Assembly: GCA_000388065.2 (NCBI GenBank)
Contig: KB932204.1
Length of the DNA: 64,000 bases
Direction: 5' to 3' (one strand)
DNA from: Fonticula alba ATCC 38817
Lineage: Eukaryota > Protista > Nucleariida
Notes under the pieces: model-generated
What the model saw: the letters and a program-made list of their open reading frames with translations, nothing else
Told to the model about the DNA's origin: nothing
The model's database searches: none
Made by a program: the position numbers and the translations under genes
Part shown: positions 37,525 through 63,732 of the stretch, in pieces
How positions within the stretch are numbered: the first letter of the stretch is position 1
How the letters are laid out: each line of letters begins with the position of its first letter

Positions 37525-40500
37525 ATGAGCCAGGCCCCGCCGCCCCAGTCGGCGGCCGACTCTAACCCCGGGGCACCGGCTGACTCGGGCGCCTCGTCGG
37601 CCTTTGGTGTCCTACGGCGGCTGCTCTTTTTGGGGGATGCCCCCTCGGCTGATCTGGCCGCACCGGGCCCCGGCACGGCTGGTCGGCCGTCTCATGGCCC
37701 GGGCCCGGGCCCGGGCCCGGGCCCTGCCGCAGACTCCTCGTCTATCGCGAGCTCGTTCTCCTCCCTCATGGGTTTCCTCTCGCCCACCGATGAGGCATCT
37801 CATGCTGGGTCGTTTGCCGGACACGCGTCGCTGGACCACGCATCGAGCTCCACGCAGTTGACTTCCTTCCCGCCGCCGCTGTTCGTCCCGCGGTCGACTG
37901 TCGTGCCGGATTCTGGCCCCGGCTTGGAGGCAACCCTGGATCCCGCCTCGGCTGCGGGCGGATTTCCCCCACCTGACCTTGAGGCCTTGTGCACGGCTCA
38001 ACGGCCGGCGGAACTGGCGCCGGAGGAGCCCCTCACGCCGGAGGGGGAGTTTTTCGAGGAGCCGGAAACGTGTGTCGCCCCTCCGCCTTTGTGATTCCCC
38101 TCCTTGGCCTTCCCTTTGGTGGGGGAATCTTCCTTGCTGGCATCCTGTCTGACTTCCCGCTTGCAGCTTCTTCCAGACAGTGGCCGCCCTTCGGGCCATT
38201 TGGCCGCACGGGGCCGATCTCTCCATCTCCACGCGGCCAGCCACAGATGACTCCTGCTCCTCGTGTGGGGAGCGCTTCACCGGTGTTCGTCGCCAGTGCG
38301 TGCCATTCGATTGGCCGACCCCGCGTCGATGCTCTTTCCCCCCCCCCCTGGCGCCTTCCTCACTCCTTGGTTGCCCTCATTTTCCATCCTCGCCCCCCTG
38401 CTGCTTGCCAACCCTCCGATTGGCTGTCCCTCCGGCTGTTGGCCCGTTCGTCGCCCCTCGGCCTGCTCCCTGGGCCCCGCCGACCCCTGAAACAGGGTCC
38501 CCTGCCATGTGTGTGTGCGGGATTTCTGTGCGAGTTGCACCACCTCGGCCATCATCCACCTGGACCCGGCCGCCGCCTTTCCCGGTGACAGTCTCGATCA
38601 CAGCTCCGTCAGTCGACTCTGGTGCGCGGGCCCTGCCCCTGCTGCGTGTTCCCTTCTTTCCCGCCCCCCCCCCCTCCCCTTCAAGGGCAGGAAGGCACGC
38701 CTGCTGCCTTGCCCTTTGGCGCGCCACCCTCCTGACCCAATCCCGCAGTTTCCACTGCTCCTCGATCGTCGGCGACATGGCCCTGCTGGGGCCGGTGCCT
38801 CGGTGCCCGGATGCCCCGGTGCCAATCTTCTCGCTAGACTCGCCGGCTGGCGGGCTGACACGCATCCTGGCCTCGCGGCGTCTGGCCAACTCGGCGCTGG
38901 GGATTGACCTGTCTTCCGCCGCGTCTGCCGCATACCTGCTGCTATCCCGCTCGAAGATCCCCTTCTCACATGTCACCTTCGGGGTGCACATCACGACGCT
39001 CTTCCGATCTCGCCGGCTGGCGGGCTGACACGCATCCTGGCCTCGCGGCGTCTGGCCAACTCGGCGCTGGGGATTGACCTGTCTTCCGCCGCGTCTGCCG
39101 CATACCTGCTGCTATCCCGCTCGAAGATCCCCTTCTCACATGTCACCTTCGGGGTGCACATCAACTCGTATCTGGCCCCGCGGCCGGATCCCGGCGCGCT
39201 GACCGACGCGCCGGCTCCCGTGGACCCTCGACCTCGACTGGCCTTCCGAACGAACCCGAACAGCCTCGCGGACTTTGCTCTTCCTCGCCAGACGCCGGTT
39301 CTGGTTCCCCCCCAAAAGGACACTTTGGTCCGATTCCAAGTCCCCACGTCCATCGGCCCGGCCTCGCACCTGCGCACCCGCCTGGCCCTGAGGTATGCCC
39401 AGCTCCTGCCACGCCGCCTCCTGTGTCTGCCTCTCTGGGACATTTCTCACCCCGCCTCGATTCCCTTTCCTTTTCCGCCGGGCTGCTCCCGATGAAAAAA
39501 AAAATTACACCACACCCCCCGAAGCCATCTCCGCCTGTCCACCAATCAGCCGATGGCCTCGGGCCCGGAATTGCTTCGGACACCGACTTCTCCCGAGGGC
39601 GTGCTCTCCTCGGCGGGCCGCGGGCCCCCGACGCAGACGCCGCTTCCGGCCAAATCGCCGGCTGCCACGTCGTCCTCCGATCAATCGACCGCGGCTACCT
39701 CGGCCCCCACGAAGCGGCCATCCCCCCGCCAGCCGGCACCCGTTACCCCGGCCGAGCTTGCGGCCGCCAAGCTGGATCTGAATGCGGTCCCGGGAGCCCC
39801 GCCCCCGGGGGATGTGATGGAGGCCCTCGTTCGCCGAGAGCTGGCCTGCTTTGCGCCCTCCTGGTCGCATCGGCTGCTGGACATGCTGGAGCCCGACATG
39901 CTGGATCACTTCTTGCGGCTCCTGGCCCAGCTTCTTGTCAATCAGCGGCTGGCTCTCGATTGGGCCGTGATCTTGTGCCATCTGCTGGCGCCGGCGGCGC
40001 AAACCATGCTCCGGTCGAGGGCCCGCACAGAGCAGGCTCTCTTCGCGCGGCAGTTCATCCACGTGAAGAAGCTGCCCCTGTGTCCGGCGACAGCGCCCGG
40101 GCCGGAGGCCGGGGGCCAATCTGCCGCCGGGAGCCTGGCCATGCGCCGCCGCTCGGACTTTGTCGGGGGCCTGGTCTTTTCCAAGGATCTAGCGCACCGG
40201 AAGATGCCAAGCTTCGTGGCCGAGCCCCGGGTGCTGTTGCTGAAGAATGGCTTCGATTTTTCCCGACACGCCTCATCCTTCGGGCCGCCCAGCTCAGGGG
40301 CCCGGTCCGGAAGTCCCGGTGCCACGGGCCCTGGTGGCGAGTCGGTTGACACCGGCTCGGGTTCCGGCTCCGGCTCCGGCTCCGGCCCCGGCTCCGGTTC
40401 TGGCTCTGGCCCCAGCCCGGGCTCCGGCCCCGGCTCCGGTCCGGGCCCCAGCCTTGGCCCCGGGCACATGGAGCTCACCATCAATGATCGAGAGGTGGAG

Positions 40501-43500
40501 TACCATCGATCGATGATCGCGCTGCTGTATCGCAACCGGCCGGATGCCATTTTCCTTGGCGGAAGCGCCAGCCGACTGGGGATCGACATGCTCCTGCGGC
40601 AGGACCCCTCGCCGCCGGCCATCTTCACGCATGTGAAGCCGCGCATCTTGCAGCTGCTGTCGCGCCTGACCGGGGCCGAGGTGGTGGATTGGATTGACCG
40701 AAAGCCGTCCGTGGCCCTGGGCCGGTGCGAGGCGGTTTTCGTGTCTCACCATCGGGTGGGTGTCCGAGCTGGCACGGGGTCCGGCGTGAAAACCCTGACT
40801 TTCCTGACCGGGCGCGGGGAAACCCGCGTCGGGACCGTGGTCCTGTGCGGGGCCCCGGCCGCCGAGCTGACTCGGGTGAAGAATGTCCTGCTGTTCCTCC
40901 TCCACACGGTGGTATCCATGGTCCGGGAGAGCGCCCTGCGGGCCGACATGTTCATGACCCCGGCGCGACCGGTGGTCCGGTCTCTGGCTGTGGATCTGGC
41001 CCTCTGGGCGGAGGGGTCCTTGGATGGGAGCCCAAGCGACCTGGCAGGGGGGGATCCCCTGGCCCGGCCGCGGGCTGCCATCCAGCGCATTCGGGCGATG
41101 GCCGCCAAACAGGGCTTCCGCTTGGCCTATCGGAATGCCCTTCACCAGGTTCTGTTGGACTACTTGCTGCTGGTAGATGGCCAAGCGCCGGCCGGGGCGC
41201 GCCTGCCGGTGAGTGTCGCCACCAGTCTCCGGGCCAGTCGCGATACCATTCTCTCCTCCTCGCCGTCGGTGGCCTTCCCCCTGTCGAAGTGCTTGCGCCA
41301 GGCCCTGGACCGGGTGCTGCTTGGGCACCCGGCCGGCATGGAGGCCGCCTTTGAGAGCCCCTGGTCCGAGTCTTTCCCGCTGGTGCCGGCCCCGGATGGG
41401 GCTCTGGACCTTGGGTCCCTGTCCGAGGCCCAAGTGTTGGATCTCTTCCGCCGGGCGGCCACCATTCAGAATGCCGAGCATGAGCTCTGCATGCGAGATG
41501 CCCGGCTCCAGGCCATTCTGCCCACCTTGCGGCCGCTGTCACGCGGGTGCATCTCCCTGCTGACCAGTGTCGGAAATGCGCCGGGCGCGCGTGCCCCCTG
41601 CCGCCCGCCGAGCCTGCTGACCATTGTCATTAATAGCTGTGCGTCTGCGGGGGCATTGGTGGCGCTTGCTTTGCGTGCCCTTCTTTCTTTTTCCCTCGTC
41701 CGCTCGCTCGCCCCGGTCCTTCGCGCACTTCATGCCTCCATGCTCGACAATTCCCCATCCCCCTTTGCTGACTTGTAGGAGGGGCGGGGGGGCCAAAAAA
41801 AAAAAAAAAAAAAAGACCGCGACATGACGCTTGGGCACTTCATCGTGGACATTTGCCAGCAAGCCATGCCGGCCCCCTTCGCCGGGAGTTCGGCCAGCGA
41901 CAGCAACCGCCCGCGGACGGTCTATTGCACTGCCTGCACGCAGCCATACCTACTTCACACGCGCACCTTCGCCCATGGGAACACCCGGGTGGCGGTTCGG
42001 ACAAGCAAGAATCCCTCCCCCATCCCGGGGTCGCTGGAGTCCATCCATGTTTGGTCCAAGTGCAAGATTTGTTCGCTGAGTATGCTGCCTCGCTGCTTTC
42101 CCCCTGCTGCGGTCTCCTTCCGCCCTGGCCGCGGAGCTGCCTTCCCTGGCCCTGGTGCTGTCTGGTAGCTGACCCTGCTTTTGCGCCTCCATCCCCTCCC
42201 CCCCCCCTCCGCCGTGGCTCTGTAGCCTCGCCGGTGTCTCTCCTTTCGGACCAGGCCTACTCCCTGTCGGTGGGCAAGTTCTTTGAGCTCTTCTTCCACG
42301 ATCGGGCCTCGGCTCTGAGCGAGGATCTGCGCTCCGAGCGTGGGCGCTGTGAGCACTCCTTCTTCCGGGCCTGCTCCATCTTCTTCTCCTTCCAGAACAT
42401 CCAAGTGGAGTTGAATGCTCTCGAGGTCCACCGCCTGAATATTGTCCTCCCGCCGCGCCTTCTCCATGTGCCTGGGCTCATGGCGGCCCGGCTGAACCTC
42501 CCAGCGGCCGAGGTCGATTCTCGGGAGGCGGCACGCTTCGCCGTTGTGGCCAATGCATTGGGCTCCCTCTTCACCTCCATCAGCACCATGCTGCAGAGTG
42601 CGTCGCGGCCTTCGCGCAAGCCCTGGCCCTGGTTGCTGCCGTTCCTCCTTTCCATCCGGCCCCCGGCTGGGCCACCCCATGCGCCTGGCCCTTTTCTCGC
42701 CCTCCTTTATCCCTTGGCCCCCCCCCCCCCGCCCCCCTCTCACTCGCTCGCTCTCTCTCTCTCTTCCCCGCTCTCTCCCTTTGCATCTCTCGGAATAGGG
42801 GTCGCCAACTTCTTGGTGATCCCGGCCCTGGAGAAGCCGCTGGAGGCTGTGCTCAATCTCCTCAGCCAGCAGGTGGCCCTGGACCAGGCAGACTTCGAAA
42901 GCAGGCTGGCCGGCATCCAGGAGGCCGAGCGCCTGCTCCTCAGGCAACCATCGGACGCGGCCCGAAGCCGTTTGGCGGCATTGCTGGCCACACTGCCGGT
43001 GTCGCACGACCCGCGGCATCCGGTGGTGGACGCGCATCTGGCCTTCGGCGTGGCCGAGGGCATCACCGCCCTCGGGCTGGAGAATGCCTGGCAGCGCCAT
43101 CCGCCGGTGCCTTTCCTGCTGGCGGCCCTGAGCCGCGACCTGCACGAGTATTTCATCCAGTGGTCATACATCCTCCGGCATGTGGTATTCTACTATGCGC
43201 ACGGGGGCCTTCTCCTTTCCCCGGCCCAGCTGTCCCTGACAACGGTGTCGGGGTATGAAATTGCGGCGCTCAATCCGCTGGACTTCTTTGCCGTGGTGCA
43301 GCCGGCCATTCCGGCCGACATGTCGGCCGATGGCCTGAACGATGCACCGGTCGACACGCCGCCCGAAGCCGGGCCCATGCACACGCGGGTGCACTCGGGT
43401 CAGGAGTCGTCCGGATCGGCGGCGGACCTGTTGCCTGGCGCCCCGAATGAGGGGGCTGCCTCGGGGCCTCCCTCGGCGGCCCCGGCGCCATCCAGCTCCG

Positions 43501-45163
43501 AGGGGGATCTGGCGTCCAGGCAAGTGCCAGTGGCGACGTCTGCATCGGCCGATGCGCTGCCGGCCACGAGGCTGGCCATTTCCACGAGCCGGATGTCGGT
43601 GGCGGTCTCGGCCACGACGACCGGCCTCGGGACCAGTGCCCTGCCGTCGTCTCAGCTGCTGGCCGTCTTGGCAGACAAGAACATGCCCTTCGTGCGGGCC
43701 CTGCTCCGGCGGCGCCCGCACTTGGCCGCCTCGCTGGGGCCCATTTCCTGTCAGAAGGTGGCCTACCCGAAGGAGATCGATGTCATGCTGGTGGATGCGG
43801 TGATGAATCTCTCCCGGCCGGGGGCTGGAGGCCGCGACATCAGCAGCGGGTCGCCCGGTACGGCGACCCCGGCCACGGTCCCCGGAACCCCGGATGACCT
43901 TCTTTCCCCGGAGCCCTCGCGCCCGGCATCCCCAGGCCCGGGTTCCGCTGGCTCGCCCTCCTTCCCGGTCAATCCATTTGATGCCTTGCGGCCGGAGGAG
44001 CTTCCCACGGCCACCGGCATGGCCTGCTCCTCGACCTCCGACTCGGAGCCGGAGCCGGTGCCCGGCTCGGGCGAAGACTCGGCCTCGGCTGGGTGCTCGC
44101 CGTCGGGACCCACATTGACGGAGCTTCTCATGGCGGAGGTGAACAGCCAGGCAGCGGCTGAGGCCGAGGTCGCGGCACTCACCGCCCTCGAGGCTGGATC
44201 TCCGGCGGCGGCGGCGGCGGCAAACACATCATCAGTCCTGGCCGAGACCGGCGAAGTGGCGGCCATGCCGATTGGCTCGACGCTTGGCCGCGCGCCGCAG
44301 GCCACCGATACGCCGGCCTCGAGCTTTGTCGACGCTCCGGGCTACCTGCTGCCCAGTGGCTCGGGCTTCTCGCTGCCGGTGGCACTGCCGGCAGCCGGCC
44401 GCGAGCAGGCCACAGCGCCTTCGCTCGGGAGCGCCCTGGAGCCGGCCAGTGTGTCTCTACCGGCGGAGTTCCAGGTGGCCACCGGGCCTCCGCCAATCCC
44501 GGCACTTGTGGATCCTCTCCCGAAGGGAACGCTCATCTTCGAGGGGTCCGACATTCCCGTGTCTTTGGACAATCCGATGTCGATTGTGGCCTTTTGCATG
44601 AAGTGCGTGTTCCGTGGCTCCACTCTTCATATGCGCTGCTGTCCTGGCACTGACATTGGTCACTTGGTGGTCCTTCCCTGCCTGCTGCAGTTCCCCGCAG
44701 TACCGGCAGAATTTGGTGCACATCCGGAAACGCGTGCGGGCCACCAATGTTCCTGGCTCTTCTAAGACCTCGCCGCCGATGCTGGATTTGCCAATCCCCC
44801 CCCGGCCGGGGCAGGCACCTGTCAACGACGTGCCGGTGACCGCCTCCACAACCGAAGCCGAGGGGCATCCGGTGGGGGCCGGGTTGCCTGCCGCCGCCGC
44901 TGCCGCCGCCGCCGGCCATCCCCAGCCGACAGCCTCGCAGGCCGACCGCGAGGAGTATTTGGCCTCGCTGGCCTACCTATCCCACTTTTCGCCCCAGCAT
45001 CGGAAATTCGGTACGCACCACGACAATGTGGTTCTCTCTCTCTTTCTCTCTCTTTCTCTCTCTCTCTCTTTCTCTCTTTCTCTCTCTCTCTCTTTCTCTC
45101 TTTCTCGCTCTCTCTCTCTCTCTTTCTCTCCCTCTCTCGCTCTCTCTCTCTCTCTTTCTCTCC

Positions 45164-48868: not shown

Positions 48869-50028
48869 GTCCATCGGTTATCCATGATAGTGAGATTTCT
48901 GTATTACCGCACATCCCCCCCCTCCTCCTCTTTCCTTCCTTCCTTCCACCCTCCTCTGACATTTTCCTCCCCTTTTTAGTGTCCGTGAGATCCAGCATCC
49001 GGCTGATCGCTCGTTCAAGAGCTCCCTTTCTTTTAATAATTGAGCATTTGGGATCGTCGCGATCGGGACATCAGGGGGGGGGGAAGATGCGAGCGCGCAT
49101 TGCGAGGGGGGGGGAGTGAGAGGGGCAAGTTGGGTGGTTTTGATGAAGGCCCAGTGTCTGGTGACCCGGTGCGCCTGTCGGGCGGGGGGGGGCCGGTGCA
49201 TCCCCGATGTCTCTCTGCGCGCACACCTTGCTGTGCACTTCCATAAGAGAGGAGACCCTGCGGCAAGAGAGCGAGACACCTCCTTCTGTGCCCCTAGGAA
49301 GAGAACTATCCACACTCGACAGTGGGAGACACCGAGGAGGCCCGAGCGGAGGATCTCGGCCAGATACACGCGGCCGTGCGTTTCCCCCCCCCCCCCGACC
49401 CCCCCCCCCCCCCCCACCACCCTCTCCCCCATCCCCTAACTCACAACTCCCCACTCTACTTTCTATTTATTTCTTAGTTGTTACTATTCACGTCATGTTT
49501 TTTCCTATTCTCTACTTCTTTTCTTCCTTCTCTCGCTCTCTCTCTCTCTCTTTCTCTCCTTCTCTCTCTCTTNNNNNNNNNNNNNNNNNNNNNNNNNNNN
49601 NNNNNNNNNNNNNNCCCCCCCCCCCCCCCCCCCGAGCAAGGTGCACTTCTTTTTCTATGTAAAGATTTATTTGGGATTGTCGAATTTGCTCTTCGTTTCC
49701 GGACAAGGGCAGCTGTTTTTCCCCTTTCCCACGCACAGCCCAGTTCTTCCTCCTTCTGTCTCCTCGCTCTTGCGCTCTCTGTCCCTCTTCCTTGCCGAGA
49801 CACGCAAGGGGTCTAAATCTCTCCTCGGTCGGCCGGCCGGCCGGCGCCGCGCCCAGGATATGGCCGGGCACAGCAGCACGCGGCAGACCGCCCGCCAACC
49901 GAGGAAGAAGGGATTTCTCCGAGCAACGTAACAAAGAGATCTGGCGCGAGGAAGGACTAAAGGGATCCCCCAGAGGGAGAGAAGGATACACCGGGCGAGT
50001 GTGAGAGGAGACAGATGGCTCACGCGCC

Positions 50029-52680
50029 CTAGGAGGTGGGCGCCGCGAACAGCGGGTTGTCGGCGGTCGTGGTGCGCGACGTGAACAGGGGATTGTTGTT
50101 GTCGGTGCCGCCCAGATCGGCCGCCTGCTTGCTGCTTGCCAGGAGGCCATTCTTGGCGGCGTACTTGACGGCGAAGACGGCTCCGGCGGCCACCAGCCCG
50201 GCGGCGGCCACCGCGCCGACGGCGATGCCGACAATGGCCCCGGTGCCGAGGTTCGAGCAGGCGTCCTCCGGGCGGACACACTGATCGCACGAGTCCACCA
50301 CCATCGGCGGGTTCTGCTGGTCGGCCAGGAACCAATTGCCGCCGCAATCCTGCATGCAGATCTCCCGGTTGGCCTCGACATCGGCGGCCGGGATGCACTG
50401 GCCGCAATCGGTCAGGACCATGTCCCCGCCGAAGCGCCCACTGCAATCCGGCAGGCAGGCCTCGCTCTCCTCCCACTTGCCATCCCAATCGGTCGGCACA
50501 CAGAAGCCGCACGAGTCGAGGGTCTCGAGCTTGAAGCACTCGCCCGTTCCACAGGGGCTCAGGTCCTGGTTGCAGACATATGTCCCGGTGGAGGCGGCCA
50601 CCAGGCCGGAGGCGGCAGCGGCCGCCGGCGATTCGTCGCCCAGGCTGTTGCAGCACATGCCGCACTCGTCGAAAAGCTCGTACTGGTCGACACCGGCCAG
50701 GACCACGTCACCCGGGCACCGGCCACAGCGGTCACGCTCGCGCACCGTGCCGTCCTTGGTCACATCGCAGGCATTGGTCTCCGGGCACTGGTGGCAGGCC
50801 TCGAAGGAGGTGTCCGTGTAGAGGTCATGGCACCGAACCAGGAGCCCGGCCTCGTAGGGGTCCTCCTCCGGCGAGGAGAGGCACCCGCACTCGCGGCCCT
50901 CGGCCATCACCAGCTGGGCATTGAACTTCGGGTCATCCGGGCTGGAGTGGCAGATGCCACACCGGTCGGAGTTCCGGTTGAAGTTGCTCAAGTCCGCGGC
51001 CTGGTGGCACTCGCCGCAGAAGTCCACCGCCGCACGGCGGGCATCCGTCACCAGCAAGTACTTGCCACTGCAATCGGCCGTGCAGGACTCCTCCGAGTTG
51101 TAGCCCGGGGTAATGCGACACAGGCCGCAGGGGTCCAGGTCGGCGTTCCACTCGGCCGAGCCGACCAGCCGGCAGACGCCGCAATCGTCGCGCTCGCTCT
51201 TGGGCTTGGTGTTGGACAGGTGATGGGCCCCGGCGCAATCCTGCACACACCACGGCTCCTCCGAGTCGCTGAGCCGGCAGCGGCCGCACTTGTCCACGAA
51301 GGCCGCTCCGCCCCAGGTCCCGGCGCAGTCCTTCTGGCAGGAGTACTCCTGCTTCGGCTGGGCCGGCATGCACTTGCCGCATGGGTCGACCCAGTGCTGG
51401 GCGCCGCTCTCCGGGGTGTTGGGATTGGCGTCGGCCTTCTCGGCGGCAAACCAAATGCCAGCGCAGTCGCGCTTGCAGCGGGCATGACGCTCGGGCGCCG
51501 CCGAGCCGGCCGCTCCACCGGCTGGCCGGGCGTCGAAGCAGAGCCCGCACTCGTCCAGACGATGGCGCGCCCCGGCCGGGGCCAGGTAATGGTCCCCGGC
51601 GCAGTCGACCAGACACTGGCACTTGTCCGACCCCGGGGGACAGGTGTTTCGATCCTCCAGGCTGCACAGCAGCTGGCCGCAGGGGTCCTTCCCGCGGACG
51701 CCATTGCACTTGCCGCATTCATTCTTGTCGGCATTGGTGCCGCCACAGACGCCGCACTCATCGCGCGCCACCACGCTCTTGGGATCCGAGGTGTACACTT
51801 CGCGGCAGGAGTCCCAGACACATGCCGGGGCCGGGGGTGGTCCCTGCCCACCGGGGCCCGGGGCCACACGATGGCAGGTCCCGCAGGCGTCGACCTCATT
51901 CTCGGGCGCGGTCTTGCCTTCCATGAAGTAGGCCCCGGCGCAGTCCTTCTGGCATTTCTCATGCACGCGGGCGGCCCACTTGCCGGGGCTGGGAGCATAG
52001 CCGGGCATGCAGTTGCCGCATGGGTCGGTCAGGTTGGCCGGCTCCTCGGTGTCCTGGCGGTAGTATTGGTTCTTGCAGTCGCGCTGGCAATCGGTGTGGG
52101 TCTGGCCGCCGGCCGTGCAGAAGCCGCATTGGTCGAGGCTGAAGGCCGGCTCCTCGCCCTGCTGGTACTTGTTGCCCTTGCAGTCGGTGCTGTGGGGACG
52201 ACACGGGGGGGGGTCAGTCATTTTTCCGGGAGCGCGTATGCGGGGGGGGNNNNNNNNNNNNNNNNNNNNNNNNNNNNNNNNNNNNNNNNNNNNNNNNNNN
52301 NNNNNNNNNNNNNNNNNNNNNNNNNNNNNNNNNNNNNTGAGAGTATTTCGCAGGGGGGCCGGTGAGCTTCGAGCTGGCAGCGGCCTCCGATGGCCTTATA
52401 ATATGGGAGGGCTGTGCGGCAGGAGTCGAGCATGTCGTCTCGGGTCTCTCTCTCATACACCTACTATGCACATGCGTGCGTGTGCGTGTGTGTCTCGGGA
52501 ATGCGCAAGAGGGGGTCCCTTGAAGGGGCGCCAACCGGAAATACAATAGGCGAGAGGCTGGCGCCCGGGGGTCTATCCCTCCGCGGAGCATTCGCCGGCG
52601 CCGCTGGCGGCGTTGTCTTCGCACATACACATACACATTTGGACACACTTGCACACTGGGACTCAGGAGACACGATAGCG

Positions 52681-52712
<32 letters not shown>

Positions 52713-55700
52713 GCATGGCACAAGGAGCTACGGCGGGACGGGTTGAGGGACCACACAGGGGTACGTACAGGCATTGGCAATTGGATGTGCAGGTGTCCAG
52801 CGTGCAAAGATTCACCCCGCAGCCATTCTTGCCCATCTTGTACTTCGGGGAGTTGGGGCAGTTGCCACACGGGTCCTTCTGGTAGGTGACCCCCGGGCAC
52901 ATGCGGCAGGCATCGAGATTCTGGTTGAGGTCGGTCACATCGCGGCCGGTGGCCGGGTCGATGCGCTGCTTGACGCAGATGCCGCACACGTCCTGCACAT
53001 AGAAGTCCTCGCCCTCGCGGACCCACTCCTTGCGGCAGTCCTGCTCGCAACGGGCCGGGTTCTTGCGCGAGGTGCACTTGCCGCACTGATCGACGAAGTT
53101 CTCCGACTGGGCCTTGGCACTGTCGTACCACTTGCCGGCGCAGTCCTTGACGCAGGTGTTGGAGCTGGAACGCGGCAGGCACTGGCCGCACTCATTCAGC
53201 ACATTGGCCGGCGTGTCGCCACGACGGTAGCGGGCCCCCTTGCAGTCGGTCAGGCAATTGTCCGGCGGGCTGCTGGCCGGGTGGCACTGGCCGCAGGCGT
53301 CACGGACATTGGCCGGCGAGGTGCCGGTGTACCACTGGCCGGCGCAATCCTGGGCACAGGTGCACTGGTCGGGGCTCTTCTGGCAGAAGGCCGCCTGCTC
53401 CAGGCGACAAAGGGGCACACCGCAGGGGTTGAGCCCGCGCGGGCCATTGCACTCGCCACAGGCGTTCTTCTGCTTGTTCTCGCCCCAGCAGATGCCGCAA
53501 TCGTCCTTGTTCTTGTTGGGGTTGGTGCCGGCCGGCAGGCACTGGCCGCAGTCATCCACAAAGTGCATGGCGGCCTGGCTGGTGCGCCAGGCCCCGGAGC
53601 AGTCCTTCTTGCAGAAGGCCCCCCCATCGACGGTGGTGCATTGGCCGCATTGGTTCTTGCGGGGGGGTTGGACAAAGTGCTCGGACCCGGCAAGGCACTT
53701 GACCGCCAGGCCGGCCTTCCAGCCGGTGGCCAGGTAGTGCGCACGGAAGCCGGCCTTGTCCGAGTCGGAGGTCAGACCGGCGGTGGGGTTGGCCGCGCGA
53801 TAGGCGGCCACATCCGGCTGGCAGGCCTTCAGCGAGATGTTCCACTCGTGCTTCGTGCGGAAGGCCTCGCAGGCGAAGGGCTCCAGGTTGTCCGCGCGGG
53901 CCTTGGTGGCCAGCGCACGGGCATCCTCGCGGAACTTGCTGTCGGCCACCAGGGAGCTGATCGGATCAAACCACGCCGGGCAGATGTCATTCTGCATGTT
54001 GACATTCTTCGGCAGCCCCGAGCGGAAGAAGTTGCCGGAGCAATCCTTTTCGCACCAGCTGCTGGTGGCACCGTCGAGGGTGCAAACGCCGCACTGGTCG
54101 AAGCGGAAGGGGCCGTTGCATGTGCCATTGCAGTCGACCTTGGCCGGGCCGCCGCACACACCCTTGCAATCGAAGACCTGGGGGGGGAGTGGCGGGTTGT
54201 TGGTGGAGCGGGGGCGAGGATTTTCAGCAAGTCCAGTGAGAAGGCCGGCCACGCGAGGAAAGGGCCCCGGAGGCGAGCCGCGGGCCACGGAGGTAACCGT
54301 GGAATGTGCAACATGTCAGTCATCGGGGGAGGGGGTTCTTTCCACTTGGGTATGGGGACTCCCGGCCTGGTGGGGGTCCAGGGAACGGTGCGGGGCGCGG
54401 GTGCCGGGCAAATGGAGCGATGGGGGGGAGAGCGAGACAAACAACAGCCAGGGCCAAGAAAAAAGGCATGGCACCATGGCACGGCCGTCGGTGGCCCCGC
54501 TTGAGGACATGCCACCCGGGCGGCGGGCGCCCCAATTCGGCACCGTACCTTGCCACTATGGCGGACCCCATCGCAGCCGCAGACATCCTTCGGCGGGAGG
54601 CAGGCGTCCTTGGTGCAGGTATACTCCATGCACCGGTCGTCGCACTTGGTCACCACGTCGGTCACCTGGATGAACATGTTCTTGACGAAGTTGTGCGCGT
54701 AGACATCCTGGACGACCTTCTCGATCTGGAACAGACGAATGGTACTGCCGGCATCCAGCATTTGGCCCTGGATGGAATTCCGGGCCAGGGGATCGGCACG
54801 CACGCGCTTGTGCGTGGCGTGCGGGTCGTACCCGGAGAGGTCGCCATTTTCGACATTGAGGTTGGCCTCGCCGAATTGGGCGCTCGTCAGGCAGGTGTTC
54901 TCGTCGTCGAACTTGGAGGGGACGGCCATGAAGACGGTCACCCCGCGGCGGATGAGGATGTCGGCCGTCAGGTCGACCTCCTGCTGGAACTTCTCGAAGT
55001 TGGCCGGGGTCATGGCATTCCGGCCGAGGTTGACGTTGGACTCCGGGGGGCAGAAGAAGCGCCCGGTCGGCTGGCCGGACACCAGGTTGTCCAGCGACAC
55101 CGGCGGATCGCTGTCCTCATCGGTGAAGAGCATCAGCACCGGGTGGGCATCGGCGCGCCAGATGGTGTTGACATTGTGGTCCCGACGGTTGGCCTGGAAG
55201 ACACCGCGAATGGTCTCGAGGGTGCCTTCGTGGCCGCCGTATGTGGAAATCATCGAAATGACCTGCTCAAACTCCTCCAGGGTGTAGTCGTTCAGCGGCT
55301 GGAGGGGGGAATGAGGGGGGGAGGGGGGCACCGGGTGGGGGGTGCGGGACCGGGGGAAGGGCAACCAGTCAGGAACACAGTCATCGGAACGGGGCTCGCG
55401 GCTGCTTGTGCTCGGTGATCGTTGCGATCCGAGAGGATGGCGGCAGGGCGGGACGGGCTTGCCCAACGGATCTGACCCCTTGGTTGGGGGGGTCATCTCG
55501 CCGGAACCGGCCCCCGGACAGGATCAAGGCCAAGTGTGTCGGGGTCAAGTGGAGTGGCTACGCACGGTGAACTTCTTGTCCATGACCGGACCGCGGCCGG
55601 AATAGGTGACGATGGCCACATGGGCGTCGACGTCCGTCTCGGTGAGGAGATTCAGCCAGGTTCGGAGGACTGTGGGGACGGTTAGCGGTGGATGCGACAT

Positions 55701-56156
55701 GCGGCGGGAACCCCATCCGCCCATCAGCTCCCTCTCGGGACATCGATCAGTCGCCTGGGAGAGGCATGCCCCGGGGTCNNNNNNNNNNNNNNNNNNNNNN
55801 NNNNNNNNNNNNNNNNNNNNNNNNNNNNGGGGGGAGGGGGGCGGGGCTTCGAGACCCGGGAAAAGCGCACCATTCTTCACTGCCAGGATGGAGGGGTCCA
55901 TGGACACCGAGACATCGAGCAGGATCAAATAATCGACCTTGGTCCGAGGCGTGACCCCGGCGCACTCGGGGGCATAGCACCGAGGCGGGCCACAGAGGCC
56001 GCCCTTGGGCTGGGCAAGGGCGAGGGCTCGGACACTGGTGGTTCCAATGCTGCAAACCACCAGCAGGGCCAGCAGGCCGAGGGAGACAATGGTTCGCCAG
56101 CCGAAAGGCACCCGGGAGGGGGCAGGGGTGCCGCCGGTGTGGAGTAAGTCCGACAT
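50029..56156 (-). CDS. Type I membrane adhesion-receptor candidate: signal peptide, integrin beta-I-like vWA (MIDAS), Cys-rich repeat stalk, Gly/Ala TM helix, double NPxF tail (integrin-beta/Sib-like)
   Basis: Exons 56156-55871, 55669-55566, 55298-54549, 54177-52769 and 52189-50029 sum to 4710 nt (1569 aa plus stop), with GT..AG ends and matching phases. Hydrophobic N-terminus IVSLGLLALLVVCSIG; YLILLDVSVSM; GGHEGTLE; WRADAHPVLMLFTDEDSD; about 25 [DN]-x-C-G-x-C motifs; TM AIVGIAVGAVAAAGLVAAGAVFAV; tail NNNPLFTSRTTTADNPLFAAPTS*. Confidence 0.85.
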
Positions 56157-59683: not shown

Positions 59684-62600
59684 ATGGAAATCGCCATGGA
59701 TCAAGCCGTGGCAGCGGCGATGCCCGCTAGCACGGCGACCGATGTGTCACCCTTCATCGGGATTTTGCTGGCGGTCAATGAGCGCGCCGGGCACAAGCTG
59801 ACTTTTGCATACCCCCCGGCGCCCGGGTTCGTCGTGCCGGCAGATCTAGATGAAGCACACCCGGGCGCCGCCGGCACAGGTAGCCCCCCCGGGCCCAAGG
59901 GCGATCTCGGCCTCGGCTCCGATCTGCCGATTGACTTGGCCGGCTTTGAGCCCTTCATCGCGGCATCGGACTTCCGCCCGGGGCTTGGAGACTATGCCGA
60001 ACACTTCCTTTCGGAGGCCGATTTGACTGAAGGCGGCTCCGACCGGTCGGGCCTCGAGTCAGGGGGTGGGTCTTCGGACTCGGGCGCCGGTGCGCCTGCC
60101 TCATCTCACCAGCCCCCTCATGGGGAGGTTGCCACGCTGCCATCCACCGTCGCCCTTGCCTTCCCTCTCCTCACCTTGCCCCCACCCCCCCTCCCTCCTT
60201 GGGGCATCGGCCTTCCCAGCACATGTCGCCCCGTCACAGTGGTCCGTCTGTCCGTTGCATGAAACGCCGGATCCCTTGCACATGTGTGACATGTGTGCCG
60301 GGGTCGTCGGTGCCAGCACTTCCTCTCCCGGGAGCCCTACTTCCCAGCCGGCATCCGGCACCACGGCTGCCCTTGGATCGACGATGCCGAGTGCCAGTAC
60401 CACCGGCTCCAGCACGCCCGGCACCGCACCACCCGGGCCGGTCTCCACCGGTAGTGGCGGCAGCGGTAGCAGTGCGCCGGCGACCACCGGCGGCGGCCCA
60501 TCTTCCAGCTCCACCAGCAGCACCCTAACTCGGGCACAGGCTTTTGGCGGCCATCTTTTCGGCATCGACATTCACTATCTCTCGGATCTGCTGACTCCCC
60601 GGCGGGCAAGCTGCAACAAGCGCTTTGAGCTGGGTGTTGATGATGTTCTCTTCATCGGCCACCCGATCGAGGTGCATCCGGGCCCGGGGTCCAGGGCCCT
60701 CGGCACCGAGTCCGGCCCGAGTCTTGAATCGCGCACCGGGCTCTACCTGTCCGAGTCCTTTTCTTCCGGAGCCGGTGGAGGGACCGGCCTGGCCGGGGCT
60801 GGCACTGGCATCGGGACCGGAGGGCCGGCGCTCGCCACCGGTATCAGCAACGGCGGCACGGTCAAGGCCACCGGTTCGCCGCATCTGCACCATGAAGATG
60901 CTCAGGATGCTGGCCGGGCATCCGAGCTCCAGCTCTTCCACGTCGTGCTTGTGGCCCGTCGGTCGGCCTCGCGGTCGGTGGTCGATCGGGCATATGATCT
61001 GGTTGTGCGCCGGGCAGCCAACATCCTGGCCCGGGAGCAATCGCGCACCGGATATGTCACCCGTGAGTGCTCCCTCTTGGCGGACACGGTGGCTAAGTAT
61101 CAGGGTGGCACGCCGGCCGGGGGAATGCAATCGATCGAGTCGGCCGTCATGCGGGAAATCCTTCGCCGGAGCGACTTGGCCCGCGGGCTGGCGCGAATGT
61201 TCGACTGCCTCGGGGATCGACGCCCGCTGGGCGGTGCCCAGGTGCCCAGGGCCCTGTCAGGCCGCGAGCATGAATCCCACTCGCTGCCGGTGCCGACCTT
61301 TCGCGAGGTTACATTCAATCGGTGGATTCGCCTGCCGGTTCCGACCGCCACGACGATCCTGCGGCCGCCTGTCATCGGCACCGAGGCGGCCGTCGGGGCT
61401 GACTCCGCGGGCCAGTTGGAGGACGATTTGGATTCGGTGTCGGTGGCCATCCGCCCATTTCACACGTTGCTGCTGACATGCCAAATTGGCGAGGATGTCC
61501 AATCAAATCACCAGGCAAATGCGCTTGGCGCCCGGAAGGGCCGTCACCTGTCTGGGCATTTCAATGCCTTCGAACTGTCGGAGCTCCTGCACGTGAACTC
61601 CGACTCGGACGAGGAACTCCCCGAGGAGGCCGACCACGAGCCGGCTCGGCGACCGCGCATGACGCACAAACAGCGTGTCCTTGCGGCCCTGCCTGGGGGG
61701 TTTTCCTCCCTCCTGCGTGAGCTGGTCATCGCATCCGATCCCTTCACCTGGTGCGCTTTTGGTCAGATCACCGGGCACCCTCGTTTGGCTTTGCGTGTTC
61801 TCTCCCGCCCCGGTGCCCTCGCTGCGCACTCACATGCCCATTCAAATGCCTCCAACACACACACACACACACACACACATCTATATTTATCTTTATTTTT
61901 GTACCTATCCGCGTGCATACTTGGGCTGCCCAGCTTTTCCGACCTCCAGGCCGGCCTCTGTGTGCCGGATCTCCCGGGGGTTGGGTCGGTTCCAGCGGCA
62001 CTGACAGCCGCCGCAAGACACCTGGTTTCCTGGGGCCTGGCCGTCGTGTGCTATCCTCCGCGGGGGTTTTCGCGCTTCCTCCCGCGCGTGGTCCCCGAGA
62101 CATGGGCCCTTGCCCAGCGGGAGTACGCCGAGCGCTTTGGCCATCGGTGGGACTCAAGTCCGATCGGAGCCGGGCGCTGGCTCGGTGACCTCGCCCACCT
62201 ACTTGGGCTTTTTGCCCGCGGTGCCCCCTTGCAGGAGGTCATGACCATGGCGACAGCCGGCTTGAAGCATCCGGGCCAGGGCCGGGGCTCTCTCCTTCGG
62301 CGGCTTGTGTGGTTGCTCCGGCGCGGGCTGGTGGAGGAATTGCACGTCTTTCCGAGGCTCCTTCCTCCCTTTGCCCCGGTCGGCTTGGCTCCCGGGGTTG
62401 CGATGCCACTGGCGGCGGAGCGTTTTGCCCGCGCGACGCAGCTGCTACGCGATGCCCTGGCTCGGCCGGTGGCCGGTCCGGCTTCGAGCTCGTTGCCGAT
62501 GTTGGCACCGGCATTCCCCATGCCAGCGGGGCTTGCTGTACATGGTACCCCCGGACCGGCCTTCTCCCCGCTCGGGTCACTCGATGGGAGCCTGGGGAAT

Positions 62601-63732
62601 TTTGGGATGATGGACTTTTCGTCCCTTGCCCCGGGGCTCTTTTCGCCCTTGGGCGTGGCCGGCGAGGCCATGCCGATGCCGATGCCGATGCCGATGCCGA
62701 TGCCGATGGATTGGGCCGCCTCGATGGCGGCACTGATGCCTCTCCAACTACAAGCCATGCCTCCGACGGCCCATGCGCTGGGATTGCCGCTGCCAGAGCA
62801 GCTACCCGTGGAACAGCTGTCCTTGGAGTCTGTGCCACAGCAGCCCCGCCACCATGCCCATCAGCAGCTTTCGTCGCAACACCACCAGTATCCACTTGGA
62901 CTGTCCTGGGGCGAGGGCGACAGCCAGGGCTTCTTGGCGGCCGGGCTGGAATCGCACGCTCCCCTGGATGAGACTGACCTTCTCCGGGCATCGGGAGCCG
63001 GTGGCCCGGGTCTCACGTCGCACGAGGGCCACCCAGCCGGCGGAGGGGCTCATGCACCGCGAGGTCGTGCGGCAGTGGCGGCGGCGTATGCCGCGGCGGC
63101 CGCGGCCGAAGCAGCCTCCGGCGCCCCCTCGCCACACATGGTGGCCTCCAATGCTGACGATGTGCCGGCCGGCCATCGTCACTCGCTGGAGGACGATCTG
63201 CACCATGGGTCCGGGGGCCCGGTGGGTGGCCTTCATGCGACTCCGCCGGCGCTCGGGCGCTTTGAGGCGCCGCCCGGGTCGGAAGCGCTCGACCCGCTGC
63301 ACTCGGGATGCCATCTCCTTTCGGAACGCGATGAGCGCTATTGCTTCCTGCTGAAACTGTGCGTCCTCCTCCCTCTTGCTCGGCCATCTTTGCTCCCCCT
63401 CCTGCCCTCTGATGCTCTGGCGGAATCTTGCCACCAAACGATGGTTCAAATTGTAACATATGCCCTTTGGCTGGGGACGCCTCCCTTGTTTATTGCTTTG
63501 CTTTCCTCCCTCCCTCCCTCCTTGTTGATCCCCTCTTCGACCTCGCGCCAGGATCTGGCCCCTGCTTGATGGTGAGCATACTCTGCATGCGATCTGTTGG
63601 CACCTGCAGCAGCTCGGCGAACTCAGCCCGACCGTGGTCCCAGGCCGGAGGACAAACACACCGGACGATGTGTATCACCTGCTGGGGCTGTTGCGTGATG
63701 TGGGGGTGTGCGTGTCCTTGATTTCCCCGTGA
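59684..63732 (+). CDS. NPR3: Nitrogen permease regulator 3 (GATOR1/SEACIT subunit NPR3/NPRL3), multi-exon
   Basis: FIGILLAVNERAGHKLTFAYP (cf. [20 protein letters not shown]); LSDLLTPRRASCNKRFELGVDDVLFIGHP (cf. [29 protein letters not shown]); EQSRTGYV; SDLARGLARMFD; IRPFHTLLL; ARHLVSWGLAVVCYP. Last intron 63359-63551 gives LLKL|IWPLLDGEHTLHAI…SLISP*, stop TGA 63730-63732. Confidence 0.9.

What the first reader, a model, noticed from the sequence alone, without database searches (positions are those of the whole stretch)
50029..56156. Integrin-beta/Sib-like adhesion receptor with a non-integrin cysteine-repeat stalk
Seen in sequence: a five-exon, phase-consistent gene of about 1569 aa with signal peptide, MIDAS-bearing vWA domain, roughly 1200 aa of Cys repeats, one Gly/Ala-rich TM helix and a short tail with two NPLF motifs. 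Established: this head/TM/tail combination defines animal integrin beta chains and Dictyostelium Sib proteins, and canonical integrins are regarded as absent from fungi. Inference: if this genome is a fungus-related amoeba (Fonticula-like, aggregative), this is a candidate integrin-type adhesion or phagocytosis receptor that kept the functional ends but replaced the hybrid/I-EGF leg with a different repeat. No integrin alpha is present in this window.
Basis: partly seen in the sequence, partly recalled or inferred. Interest (0 to 1): 0.9.

Follow-up and report, generated by a model that had tools for sequence, protein, structure and literature searches.

The report
Integrin-like adhesion receptor in Fonticula
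A slime-mould-like relative of fungi, said to lack integrins, carries a real gene for a single-pass surface receptor with a metal-binding grip domain, a long cysteine-rich rod and an integrin-beta-style tail; it belongs to an undescribed family also present in chytrid fungi and an apusomonad.

Summary
My five-exon model on the minus strand gives 1569 aa and is identical to the public protein H696_03181 of Fonticula alba, annotated only as a hypothetical VWFA protein. Both N gaps lie inside introns.

- **Stalk:** a 30-35 aa, four-cysteine repeat shared with bacterial surface proteins. It is absent from Pfam and NCBIfam and has no match among solved structures.
- **Tail:** the 14 closest homologues keep a GxxxG membrane helix. 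All 27 relatives with complete tails keep NPx[YF]-x8(7)-NPx[YF] 21-27 residues after the membrane helix, which is the integrin-beta geometry. Integrin beta tails are the best PDB matches.

The family includes unnamed protist transcripts and Thecamonas. A sister group occurs in Synchytrium and Neocallimastigomycota-type proteins.

My best reading is a Sib-like, single-chain receptor for adhesion or phagocytosis that recruits talin-type adaptors. That function is inferred, and a talin gene in Fonticula was not verified.

The scan found a paralogue before on other DNA of this genome (s1-065348). I rate it a new variant of a known kind.

The parts
50029..56156 (-). Whole gene (ATG 56156 to stop 50029-50031), 5 exons, 1569 aa; equals public H696_03181 of Fonticula alba
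55871..56156 (-). Exon 1: signal sequence (aa ~16-45), CGPPRCY..C cysteine cap, first vWA strand with MIDAS DVSVS (55902-55916)
55670..55870 (-). Intron 1 (GT..AG, phase 1), contains N gap 55779-55828
   Evidence: the junction runs without indels against homologues
55566..55669 (-). Exon 2: vWA helix 1 and strand 2
54549..55298 (-). Exon 3: rest of the vWA domain (invariant E154, TDEDSD 189-194, family-specific inserts with Cys213/Cys266) and the CxxxC..CGCDGV cysteine knob
54645..55937 (-). vWA (MIDAS) head domain, aa ~74-348, spanning exons 1-3
52769..54177 (-). Exon 4: first half of the cysteine-repeat stalk, including a conserved low-Cys insert at aa ~440-555
52190..52768 (-). Intron 4 (GT..AG, phase 2), contains N gap 52250-52337 and a (GA)n microsatellite at 52680-52712
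50254..54644 (-). Cysteine-rich stalk, aa 349-1495: repeats of C-x2-DC-x-G ... D-x-CG-x-C (30-35 aa in the regular stretches, 4 Cys)
   Evidence: model pLDDT 91, all beta-hairpins; no PDB match
50029..52189 (-). Exon 5: second half of the stalk, membrane helix, cytoplasmic tail and stop
   Evidence: the only part covered by contigs of the probable RNA runs
50167..50244 (-). Gly/Ala-rich transmembrane helix (aa ~1499-1524) with GxxxG (G1504, G1508) invariant among the 14 closest homologues
50032..50166 (-). Cytoplasmic tail (45 aa): KYAAKNGL..., NPLF (50083-50094), TSRTTTAD linker, NPLF (50047-50058)

Best explanation
The gene encodes a type I, single-pass surface receptor of Fonticula alba.

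Shown here: a metal-ion-dependent (MIDAS) vWA domain sits at the N-terminal, membrane-distal end. It is carried on about 1,150 residues of cysteine-rich repeats whose modelled segment is all beta-hairpins. A membrane helix with a conserved GxxxG motif follows, then a 45-residue tail with two NPLF motifs eight residues apart, starting about 26 residues after the membrane.

Inferred: the head binds ligands on substrata, prey bacteria or other cells through its metal site. The tail's first NPLF recruits a talin-type FERM/PTB adaptor, and the second NPLF plus the Thr-rich linker may recruit a kindlin-like one. This would couple the receptor to actin for adhesion, crawling, phagocytosis or the collective behaviours of Fonticula, as shown for Dictyostelium SibA-talin A.

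It is not a canonical integrin beta and not a Pfam-defined Sib protein. It belongs to an undescribed family (CGPxxCY cap, vWA, CGCDG knob, Cys repeats, GxxxG membrane helix, KNGL, NPLY-x8-NPLY). Its head and tail are shared with chytrid, Neocallimastigomycota-type and apusomonad proteins.
For: - **Gene model and identity:**
- **Head:** Pfam VWA is above its cut-off and the model has a confident vWA fold. DxSxS, E154 and the TDEDSD motif are invariant or nearly so in 18 modules from Fonticula, Thecamonas, Synchytrium, Neocallimastix and unnamed protists. Foldseek ranks integrin beta chains first in PDB and Swiss-Prot.
- **Family:** collinear full-length homologues exist (E 2e-95 to P0003). The family head HMM hits each vWA module of the multi-vWA proteins with membrane helix and two NPLY motifs at about 1e-25 plus 1e-17. 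Named members are Thecamonas AMSG_02252, Synchytrium SmJEL517_g04093 and a Neocallimastix lanati protein.
- **Tail:** 27 of 27 proteins with a complete tail keep NPx[YF]-x8 (24) or x7 (3)-NPx[YF], 21-27 residues after the membrane helix. The tail profile's best PDB hits are integrin beta7 (E 0.0014), beta2 (0.005) and beta1. Integrin_b_cyt is the only Pfam family matched by all 14 tails, sub-threshold.
- **Literature:** SibA-talin A force coupling through NPxY tails (PMC12686525, PMC9197732).
Against: - Function is wholly inferred, with no binding, localisation or knock-out data.
- A talin, kindlin or other FERM partner in Fonticula was not verified. Only unchecked first-stage notes mention FERM and vinculin genes.
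- NPxY/F motifs also serve as endocytic and recycling signals.
- The integrin-tail match is short (20 residues) and below Pfam's cut-off (19.2 against 23.4 bits), so convergence cannot be excluded.
- The membrane-proximal integrin motif is not matched.
- Transcription is supported only for exon 5 by low-depth contigs, and splicing was not observed.
- Toret et al. 2022 (PMC9097593) state that F. alba has no obvious integrins or Dictyostelium-like adhesion molecules, so this protein has been overlooked or judged unrelated.
Confidence: 0.6

Rival explanations
1. An endocytic or scavenger receptor. The vWA head and rod capture particles or solutes, and the NPLF motifs act as clathrin-adaptor (Dab2/ARH/Numb-type PTB) or SNX17-type sorting signals, as with FxNPxY in LDL-receptor relatives. 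There would be no mechanical coupling to actin.
For: The NPx[YF] motif class is shared with endocytic signals (established knowledge). The tail match to Integrin_b_cyt is sub-threshold and limited to the NPxY region. No talin partner was verified here.
Against: The pair of motifs at exactly x8 spacing, 21-27 residues from the membrane, is conserved in 27 of 27 relatives and matches integrin beta geometry. Endocytic receptors normally need one motif. Integrins and Sibs themselves use the same motifs for both talin binding and trafficking, so the two roles are not exclusive.
Confidence: 0.15
2. A true but highly derived integrin beta orthologue. It would pair with an FG-GAP alpha-like chain of Fonticula and have lost the PSI, hybrid and I-EGF domains.
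For: Foldseek ranks integrin beta first. An invariant Glu (E154) stands where integrin beta has its MIDAS Glu (inferred). Integrin_beta gets near-threshold hits in 3 of 13 family heads and 8 of 18 superfamily modules. The tail geometry matches. Unchecked notes report FG-GAP receptors with a KRGFFR tail in this genome.
Confidence: 0.07
3. A structural or cell-cell/matrix adhesin whose tail motifs are incidental to actin coupling. One example would be a stalk- or sorocarp-matrix or cell-coat protein built from a bacterial-type cysteine-repeat module, possibly acquired by gene transfer.
For: The stalk repeat is otherwise found in bacterial secreted or surface proteins that carry choice-of-anchor Q, T9SS, CBM96 or dockerin domains. 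Bacterial PEP-CTERM proteins share the head subtype.
Against: The whole architecture, including the eukaryote-type membrane helix and tail, is conserved across distant eukaryotes. The gene has four spliceosomal introns and host-like GC.
Confidence: 0.12

Closest known systems
Dictyostelium Sib proteins (SibA-E, 'similar to integrin beta')
   Same: Single-chain type I receptors with an extracellular vWA domain, a Gly-rich membrane helix and a short tail with two NPxY-type motifs. In Dictyostelium the membrane-proximal motif binds talin A (PMC9197732, PMC12686525). This is the best functional analogue.
   Different: Pfam vWA_SIBA-E (PF24909) is not matched by the Fonticula protein or any of 13 family heads. 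It appears only at sub-threshold level in 4 of 18 modules of the wider superfamily. Here the vWA is N-terminal and followed by about 1,150 aa of Cys repeats, whereas Sibs are described as lacking a Cys-rich stalk (10.1101/2020.04.29.069435). No Sib sequence could be fetched for direct alignment.
Animal and protist integrin beta chains
   Same: MIDAS vWA head with an invariant Glu at the second metal-ligand position (inferred). A cysteine-rich extracellular leg. A membrane helix with small residues. A tail with NPxY/F-x8-NxxY/F about 25 residues from the membrane and a Ser/Thr-rich linker. Integrin beta7, beta2 and beta1 tails are the best PDB profile hits, and integrin beta chains are top Foldseek hits for the head.
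Uncharacterised VWFA proteins: Thecamonas trahens AMSG_02252, Synchytrium microbalum SmJEL517_g04093, a Neocallimastix lanati multi-vWA protein, and unnamed transcripts
   Same: The same vWA subtype (DxSxSM, GGxExGLE, TDEDSD, YQxEID, QYGxP, SLQxQxL..R.F) and, in most, a signal peptide, a membrane helix and an NPLY-x8-NPLY tail. These are true relatives.
   Different: The fungal group has one to three vWA modules, little cysteine and often a pAdhesive_15 domain instead of the Cys-repeat stalk. It forms a separate clade from the Fonticula/Thecamonas/unnamed group. None has a described function.
Acanthamoeba mannose-binding protein and Entamoeba Gal/GalNAc lectin heavy chain
   Same: Amoebal adhesion receptors with integrin-like cytoplasmic tails carrying potential talin-binding motifs, as discussed in PMC12686525. 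That their ectodomains are cysteine-rich is recalled from my own knowledge, not taken from that paper.
   Different: No vWA head. No sequence relation was tested here, so this comparison is a lead only.

Membership tests
Integrin beta chain | Beta-I domain matching Pfam Integrin_beta (PF00362) above its cut-off (24.8 bits) | tested here: not met
   No hit for P0022 at E<=0.1 or for its head at E<=1. 3 of 13 family heads and 8 of 18 superfamily modules give weak hits; P0025 scores 23.2 bits as a whole protein, and the best E-value among isolated heads is 4.5e-6.
Integrin beta chain | PSI domain and a hybrid domain into which the beta-I domain is inserted | tested here: not met
   The head model shows a short Cys cap, then the vWA strands and helices, then a small Cys knob, with no flanking beta-sandwich. 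No PSI hit in Pfam.
Integrin beta chain | I-EGF repeats and beta-tail domain in the leg | tested here: not met
Integrin beta chain | MIDAS DxSxS plus Glu and Asp ligands; ADMIDAS and SyMBS sites | tested here: inconclusive
   DVSVS 81-85, invariant E154 and TDEDSD 189-194 are conserved. The acidic pair after 'SM' (ADMIDAS position) is not conserved in the family.
Integrin beta chain | Cytoplasmic domain matching Pfam Integrin_b_cyt (PF08725) above 23.4 bits, including the membrane-proximal segment | tested here: not met
   13.3 bits on the whole protein and 19.2 bits on the isolated tail. Only profile positions 25-44 of 44 are matched; 14 of 14 family tails hit below threshold.
Integrin beta chain | NPxY/F - x8 - NxxY/F pair about 25 residues from the membrane | tested here: met
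   NPLF-x8-NPLF begins 26 residues after the membrane helix. The same holds in 27 of 27 relatives with tails (x8 in 24, x7 in 3), at 21-27 residues. It aligns to beta7, beta2 and beta1 tails.
Integrin beta chain | Obligate heterodimer with an FG-GAP alpha chain | not testable with these tools
   No alpha-like gene lies in the window (tblastn and ORF scans). Unchecked notes mention FG-GAP receptors elsewhere in the genome.
Dictyostelium Sib family | Sib-type vWA-like domain (Pfam vWA_SIBA-E, PF24909, cut-off 27 bits) | tested here: not met
   0 of 13 family heads at E<=1. 4 of 18 superfamily modules match only at E>=0.009. The model is present in the library, since P0069 scores 28.2 bits.
Dictyostelium Sib family | Type I protein with extracellular vWA, Gly-rich membrane helix and a tail with two NPxY motifs | tested here: met
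   The Sib description is taken from PMC9197732.
Dictyostelium Sib family | Tail binds talin; loss reduces adhesion and phagocytosis | not testable with these tools
   This needs experiments.
Undescribed family (CGPxxCY cap - vWA - CGCDG knob - Cys repeats - GxxxG membrane helix - KNGL - NPLY-x8-NPLY) | Collinear full-length similarity and all signature motifs | tested here: met
   BLAST E 2e-95 to P0003 and 4e-83 to P0001 over head and stalk. Head alignment of 13 sequences has 20 invariant columns. Tail alignment of 14 sequences has invariant GxxxG and NPL. Only 48 proteins at E<=1e-3 among 1.84 billion representatives for the exon 3 query.

The most novel reading that the evidence does not exclude
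H696_03181 is the Fonticula member of an ancient, undescribed family of single-chain, integrin-beta-like receptors that pre-dates the opisthokonts. The family combines a MIDAS vWA head of one specific subtype, a GxxxG membrane helix and an NPxY-x8-NPxY tail. It survives in apusomonads, Fonticula, chytrids and anaerobic gut fungi. It would be the missing membrane anchor for the talin-vinculin-paxillin scaffold in the 'integrin-less' Holomycota. Its tail would share ancestry with, rather than converge on, the integrin beta tail.
Probability: 0.35. Interest if true: 0.85.

Novelty: new variant of a known kind. Interest (0 to 1): 0.66.

Why it matters
Published surveys say three things. Holomycota lack integrins (10.1101/2020.04.29.069435). 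F. alba has no obvious integrins or Dictyostelium-type adhesion molecules (PMC9097593). Sib proteins are confined to dictyostelids (10.1101/2020.04.29.069435). [quoted passage not shown]

This gene and its relatives in Synchytrium, Neocallimastigomycota-type proteins and Thecamonas are concrete candidates for that anchor. The NPxY pair sits at the integrin spacing and distance from the membrane in every member that has a tail.

That makes an open evolutionary and cell-biological question directly testable, through tail-talin binding, localisation and knock-outs in Fonticula or a tractable chytrid. It also bears on whether talin-based force coupling preceded heterodimeric integrins (PMC12686525). 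In addition, the stalk repeat is an unannotated cysteine module, shared with bacterial surface proteins, with no solved structure.

Tried and rejected
- **Exon pieces:** Pfam and PDB sequence searches on single exons gave nothing except a weak Integrin_b_cyt hit, because the vWA is split by introns. The full protein was needed.
- **ESM Atlas feature searches:** only generic vWA clusters below 0.9.
- **Word-index search with the head (aa 40-400):** only 3 proteins, none named apart from the query itself.
- **Real Dictyostelium Sib sequences:** the third word-index search, with P0053, returned Neocallimastigomycota-type proteins, not Sibs. The Cornillon 2006 paper is not held. No direct Sib alignment or joint phylogeny with integrin beta was therefore possible.
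- **Beta-I versus alpha-I discrimination by structure:** Foldseek favours integrin beta, but VIA-align Z does not discriminate. I rejected the claim of a specific beta-I head.
- **RNA-seq confirmation of splicing:** the only holders are tiny 2012 runs with contigs on exon 5 only.
- **Organism of the unnamed homologues:** run accessions SRR10968375, SRR28397937, ERR11260139, SRR33375175 and SRR31163103 appear in no held paper. Their contigs have 42-58% GC, so they are unlikely to be AT-rich dictyostelids.
- **Talin in Fonticula:** literature searches and the scan's own notes gave no verified answer.
- **Paralogues in the window:** none by tblastn.
- **Stalk repeat in libraries:** not in Pfam or NCBIfam.
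Full report
**1. What is in the sequence**

The finding lies on the minus strand. Six-frame translation and splice-site inspection give five exons: 56156-55871, 55669-55566, 55298-54549, 54177-52769 and 52189-50029. The four introns are all GT..AG, of 201, 267, 371 and 579 nt. The phases are consistent, the CDS is 4710 nt and the protein is 1569 aa.

An exhaustive HMMER search with exon 3 returned a 1569-aa protein, P0022, at 100% identity. It is letter-for-letter my model. Its sources name it 'hypothetical protein H696_03181 [Fonticula alba]' and 'VWFA domain-containing protein'.

**2. The gaps**

N gap 55779-55828 is inside intron 1 and N gap 52250-52337 is inside intron 4. All nearby gaps abut long G or C homopolymers, which suggests unread homopolymer tracts.

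- The first three exon junctions run without indels against 12 homologues.
- The exon 4/5 junction rebuilds 'CL|TDCKG', the same repeat start as at aa 688-694.
- A single BLAST alignment to P0003 spans aa 28-1020 across all four junctions.

Nothing therefore requires missing coding sequence, though an in-phase extra repeat hidden in the intron 4 gap cannot be excluded.

RNA evidence is thin. Four small 2012 runs, probably RNA, give 12 short contigs, all within exon 5 (50270-52175). None falls in introns or upstream exons, and no splice joint was seen.

**3. The head**

On the full protein Pfam gives only VWA (25.7 bits, cut-off 23.8, aa 77-194) and a sub-threshold Integrin_b_cyt. There is no Integrin_beta and no vWA_SIBA-E.

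An AlphaFold model of aa 50-385, built on 13 homologues, is confident (pLDDT 81, pTM 0.82). It shows a vWA fold with two family-specific inserts and a C-terminal cysteine knob, and no hybrid-type sandwich around it.

The structure searches give a mixed signal:
- Foldseek puts integrin beta chains in all top 50 PDB places and the top 16 Swiss-Prot places, at E 1e-9 to 1e-7 and TM about 0.41.
- A sequence profile of the head hits collagen VI, alpha-2 I domains and beta-8 equally.
- In AlphaFold-DB clusters, three unnamed VWFA proteins (E 1e-16 to 1e-12, TM 0.58-0.64) stand far above integrin beta.

I conclude that this is a MIDAS vWA domain of its own subtype, with at most a weak leaning towards beta-I. 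Conserved residues are DxSxSM (81-86), E154, E158, R161, T189-D-E-D-S-D194, E237, Q271, S305, Q307 and R318. The invariant E154 stands where canonical vWA domains have the MIDAS Thr and integrin beta has a Glu. That reading is an inference from the alignment register.

**4. The stalk**

Residues 349-1495 hold about 127 cysteines. The unit is C-x2-DC-x-G ... D-x-CG-x-C, with four Cys and a 30-35 aa period in the regular stretches.

On its own the repeat finds bacterial secreted or surface proteins carrying choice-of-anchor Q, T9SS tails, CBM96 or dockerin domains. It aligns in register with their 28-30 aa repeats. It is in neither Pfam nor NCBIfam.

**5. Membrane helix and tail**

In 14 family tails a GxxxG pair (G1504, G1508), 'K.G' and both NPL motifs are invariant.

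Across 27 proteins of the wider superfamily the tail is NPx[YF]-x8 (24 proteins) or x7 (3 proteins)-NPx[YF]. It starts 21-27 residues after the membrane helix.

A profile of the tails searched against all PDB sequences puts integrin beta7 first (E 0.0014, covering membrane helix plus tail), then the beta2 tail (0.005) and beta1 (0.017). Integrin_b_cyt is the only Pfam family that all 14 tails match. Every match is below the cut-off and covers only profile positions 25-44, the NPxY region. The membrane-proximal integrin segment is not matched.

**6. Relatives**

Only 48 proteins reach E<=1e-3 among 1.84 billion representatives. They fall into three sets.

- *Collinear relatives.* These share the cap, vWA, CGCDG knob, Cys repeats, membrane helix and NPLY pair. 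They come from unnamed transcript-like contigs of 42-58% GC and from Thecamonas trahens AMSG_02252.
- *A second group with the same head subtype and tail but little cysteine.* It includes Synchytrium microbalum SmJEL517_g04093, an Obelidium fragment, and multi-vWA proteins related to a Neocallimastix lanati protein.
- *Bacterial proteins.* Some PEP-CTERM-like proteins share the C-terminal half of the head.

A maximum-likelihood tree of 26 head modules separates a Thecamonas + Fonticula + unnamed clade (support 91/80) from the fungal clade (98/97). Fonticula sits on a long branch.

Integrin_beta is weakly hit by 8 of 18 modules and vWA_SIBA-E by 4 of 18. This suggests a distant kinship with both, which I could not resolve because no integrin or Sib sequences were retrievable.

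**7. Interpretation**

Shown: a real, intron-containing Fonticula gene encodes a type I protein with a MIDAS vWA tip, a long disulfide-rich rod, a GxxxG membrane helix and an integrin-geometry NPLF pair. It belongs to a conserved family.

Inferred: it is an adhesion or phagocytosis receptor that recruits talin-type adaptors, working like Dictyostelium SibA (PMC9197732, PMC12686525). The lack of an integrin-type membrane-proximal segment fits a single-chain mode. So does the co-occurrence of a relative in Thecamonas, a genus reported to have canonical integrins (PMC5042518, as Amastigomonas). The conserved GxxxG may mediate self-association.

Rival readings are an endocytic receptor, a derived true integrin beta, and a matrix or coat adhesin. 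They are scored in their own section.

**8. Literature and novelty**

- Kang et al. report Sib proteins only in dictyostelids and no integrins in Holomycota (10.1101/2020.04.29.069435).
- Toret et al. say F. alba lacks obvious integrins and Dictyostelium-like adhesion molecules (PMC9097593).
- Calkins and Youssef ask what anchors the retained focal-adhesion scaffold in basal fungi (PMC5042518).

I found no description of this family. The scan had already flagged a paralogue on another piece of this genome. Its follow-up agent reached a similar reading (s1-065348), which is not independent evidence. I rate this a new variant of the known integrin-beta-like/Sib-like receptor kind.

Noticed in passing
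window 49573-49633, 52243-52337, 55779-55845: All three N gaps near the gene abut long C or G homopolymer runs. They look like unread homopolymer tracts rather than joins of unrelated DNA.
   Followed up: partly
window 52680-52712 and 49500-49572: A (GA)n microsatellite lies inside intron 4 and a long (CT)n tract lies just 3' of the gene. Read laying reported reads cut at 52671-52720.
   Followed up: no
window 60066-63566 (+): A long ORF with a clear NPR3 domain (PF03666, E 2e-27), which marks nitrogen permease regulator 3 of the SEACIT/GATOR1 complex. ORFs at 39553-41775 and 41853-44762 gave no, or only weak, Pfam hits.
   Followed up: partly
P0022 aa ~440-555 (window ~53513-53860, exon 4): A conserved insert of about 115-130 aa with few cysteines lies between the first Cys repeats. 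It is present at the same place in homologues (P0001, P0003, P0023). It may be a separate small domain and was not modelled.
   Followed up: no
L002 and L005 (run SRR28397937); L003 and L007 (run ERR11260139): Two different family members occur in each of two unnamed samples (P0029 and P0040; P0025 and P0026), so the family is multi-copy in other organisms too. L002 is a gene-dense genomic contig with apparently intron-poor gene calls.
   Followed up: partly
P0007, P0010, P0009, P0012, P0020 (bacterial metagenome proteins): Tandem arrays of the same four-cysteine repeat (C-x2-DC-x-G-x-WGG..D-x-CG-x-C), 28-30 aa in the regular arrays (P0007, P0010, P0009, P0012) and up to 37 aa in P0020, occur in bacterial surface proteins. 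They sit next to choice-of-anchor Q, T9SS or beta-helix domains. This module has no Pfam or NCBIfam model and no solved structure.
   Followed up: partly
P0039 and P0051: Short Cys-free proteins end in a PEP-CTERM-like sorting signal and share the C-terminal half of this vWA subtype (LQ.Q.L.AG...R.FD...FV.NF). The head subtype therefore also exists in bacteria.
   Followed up: partly
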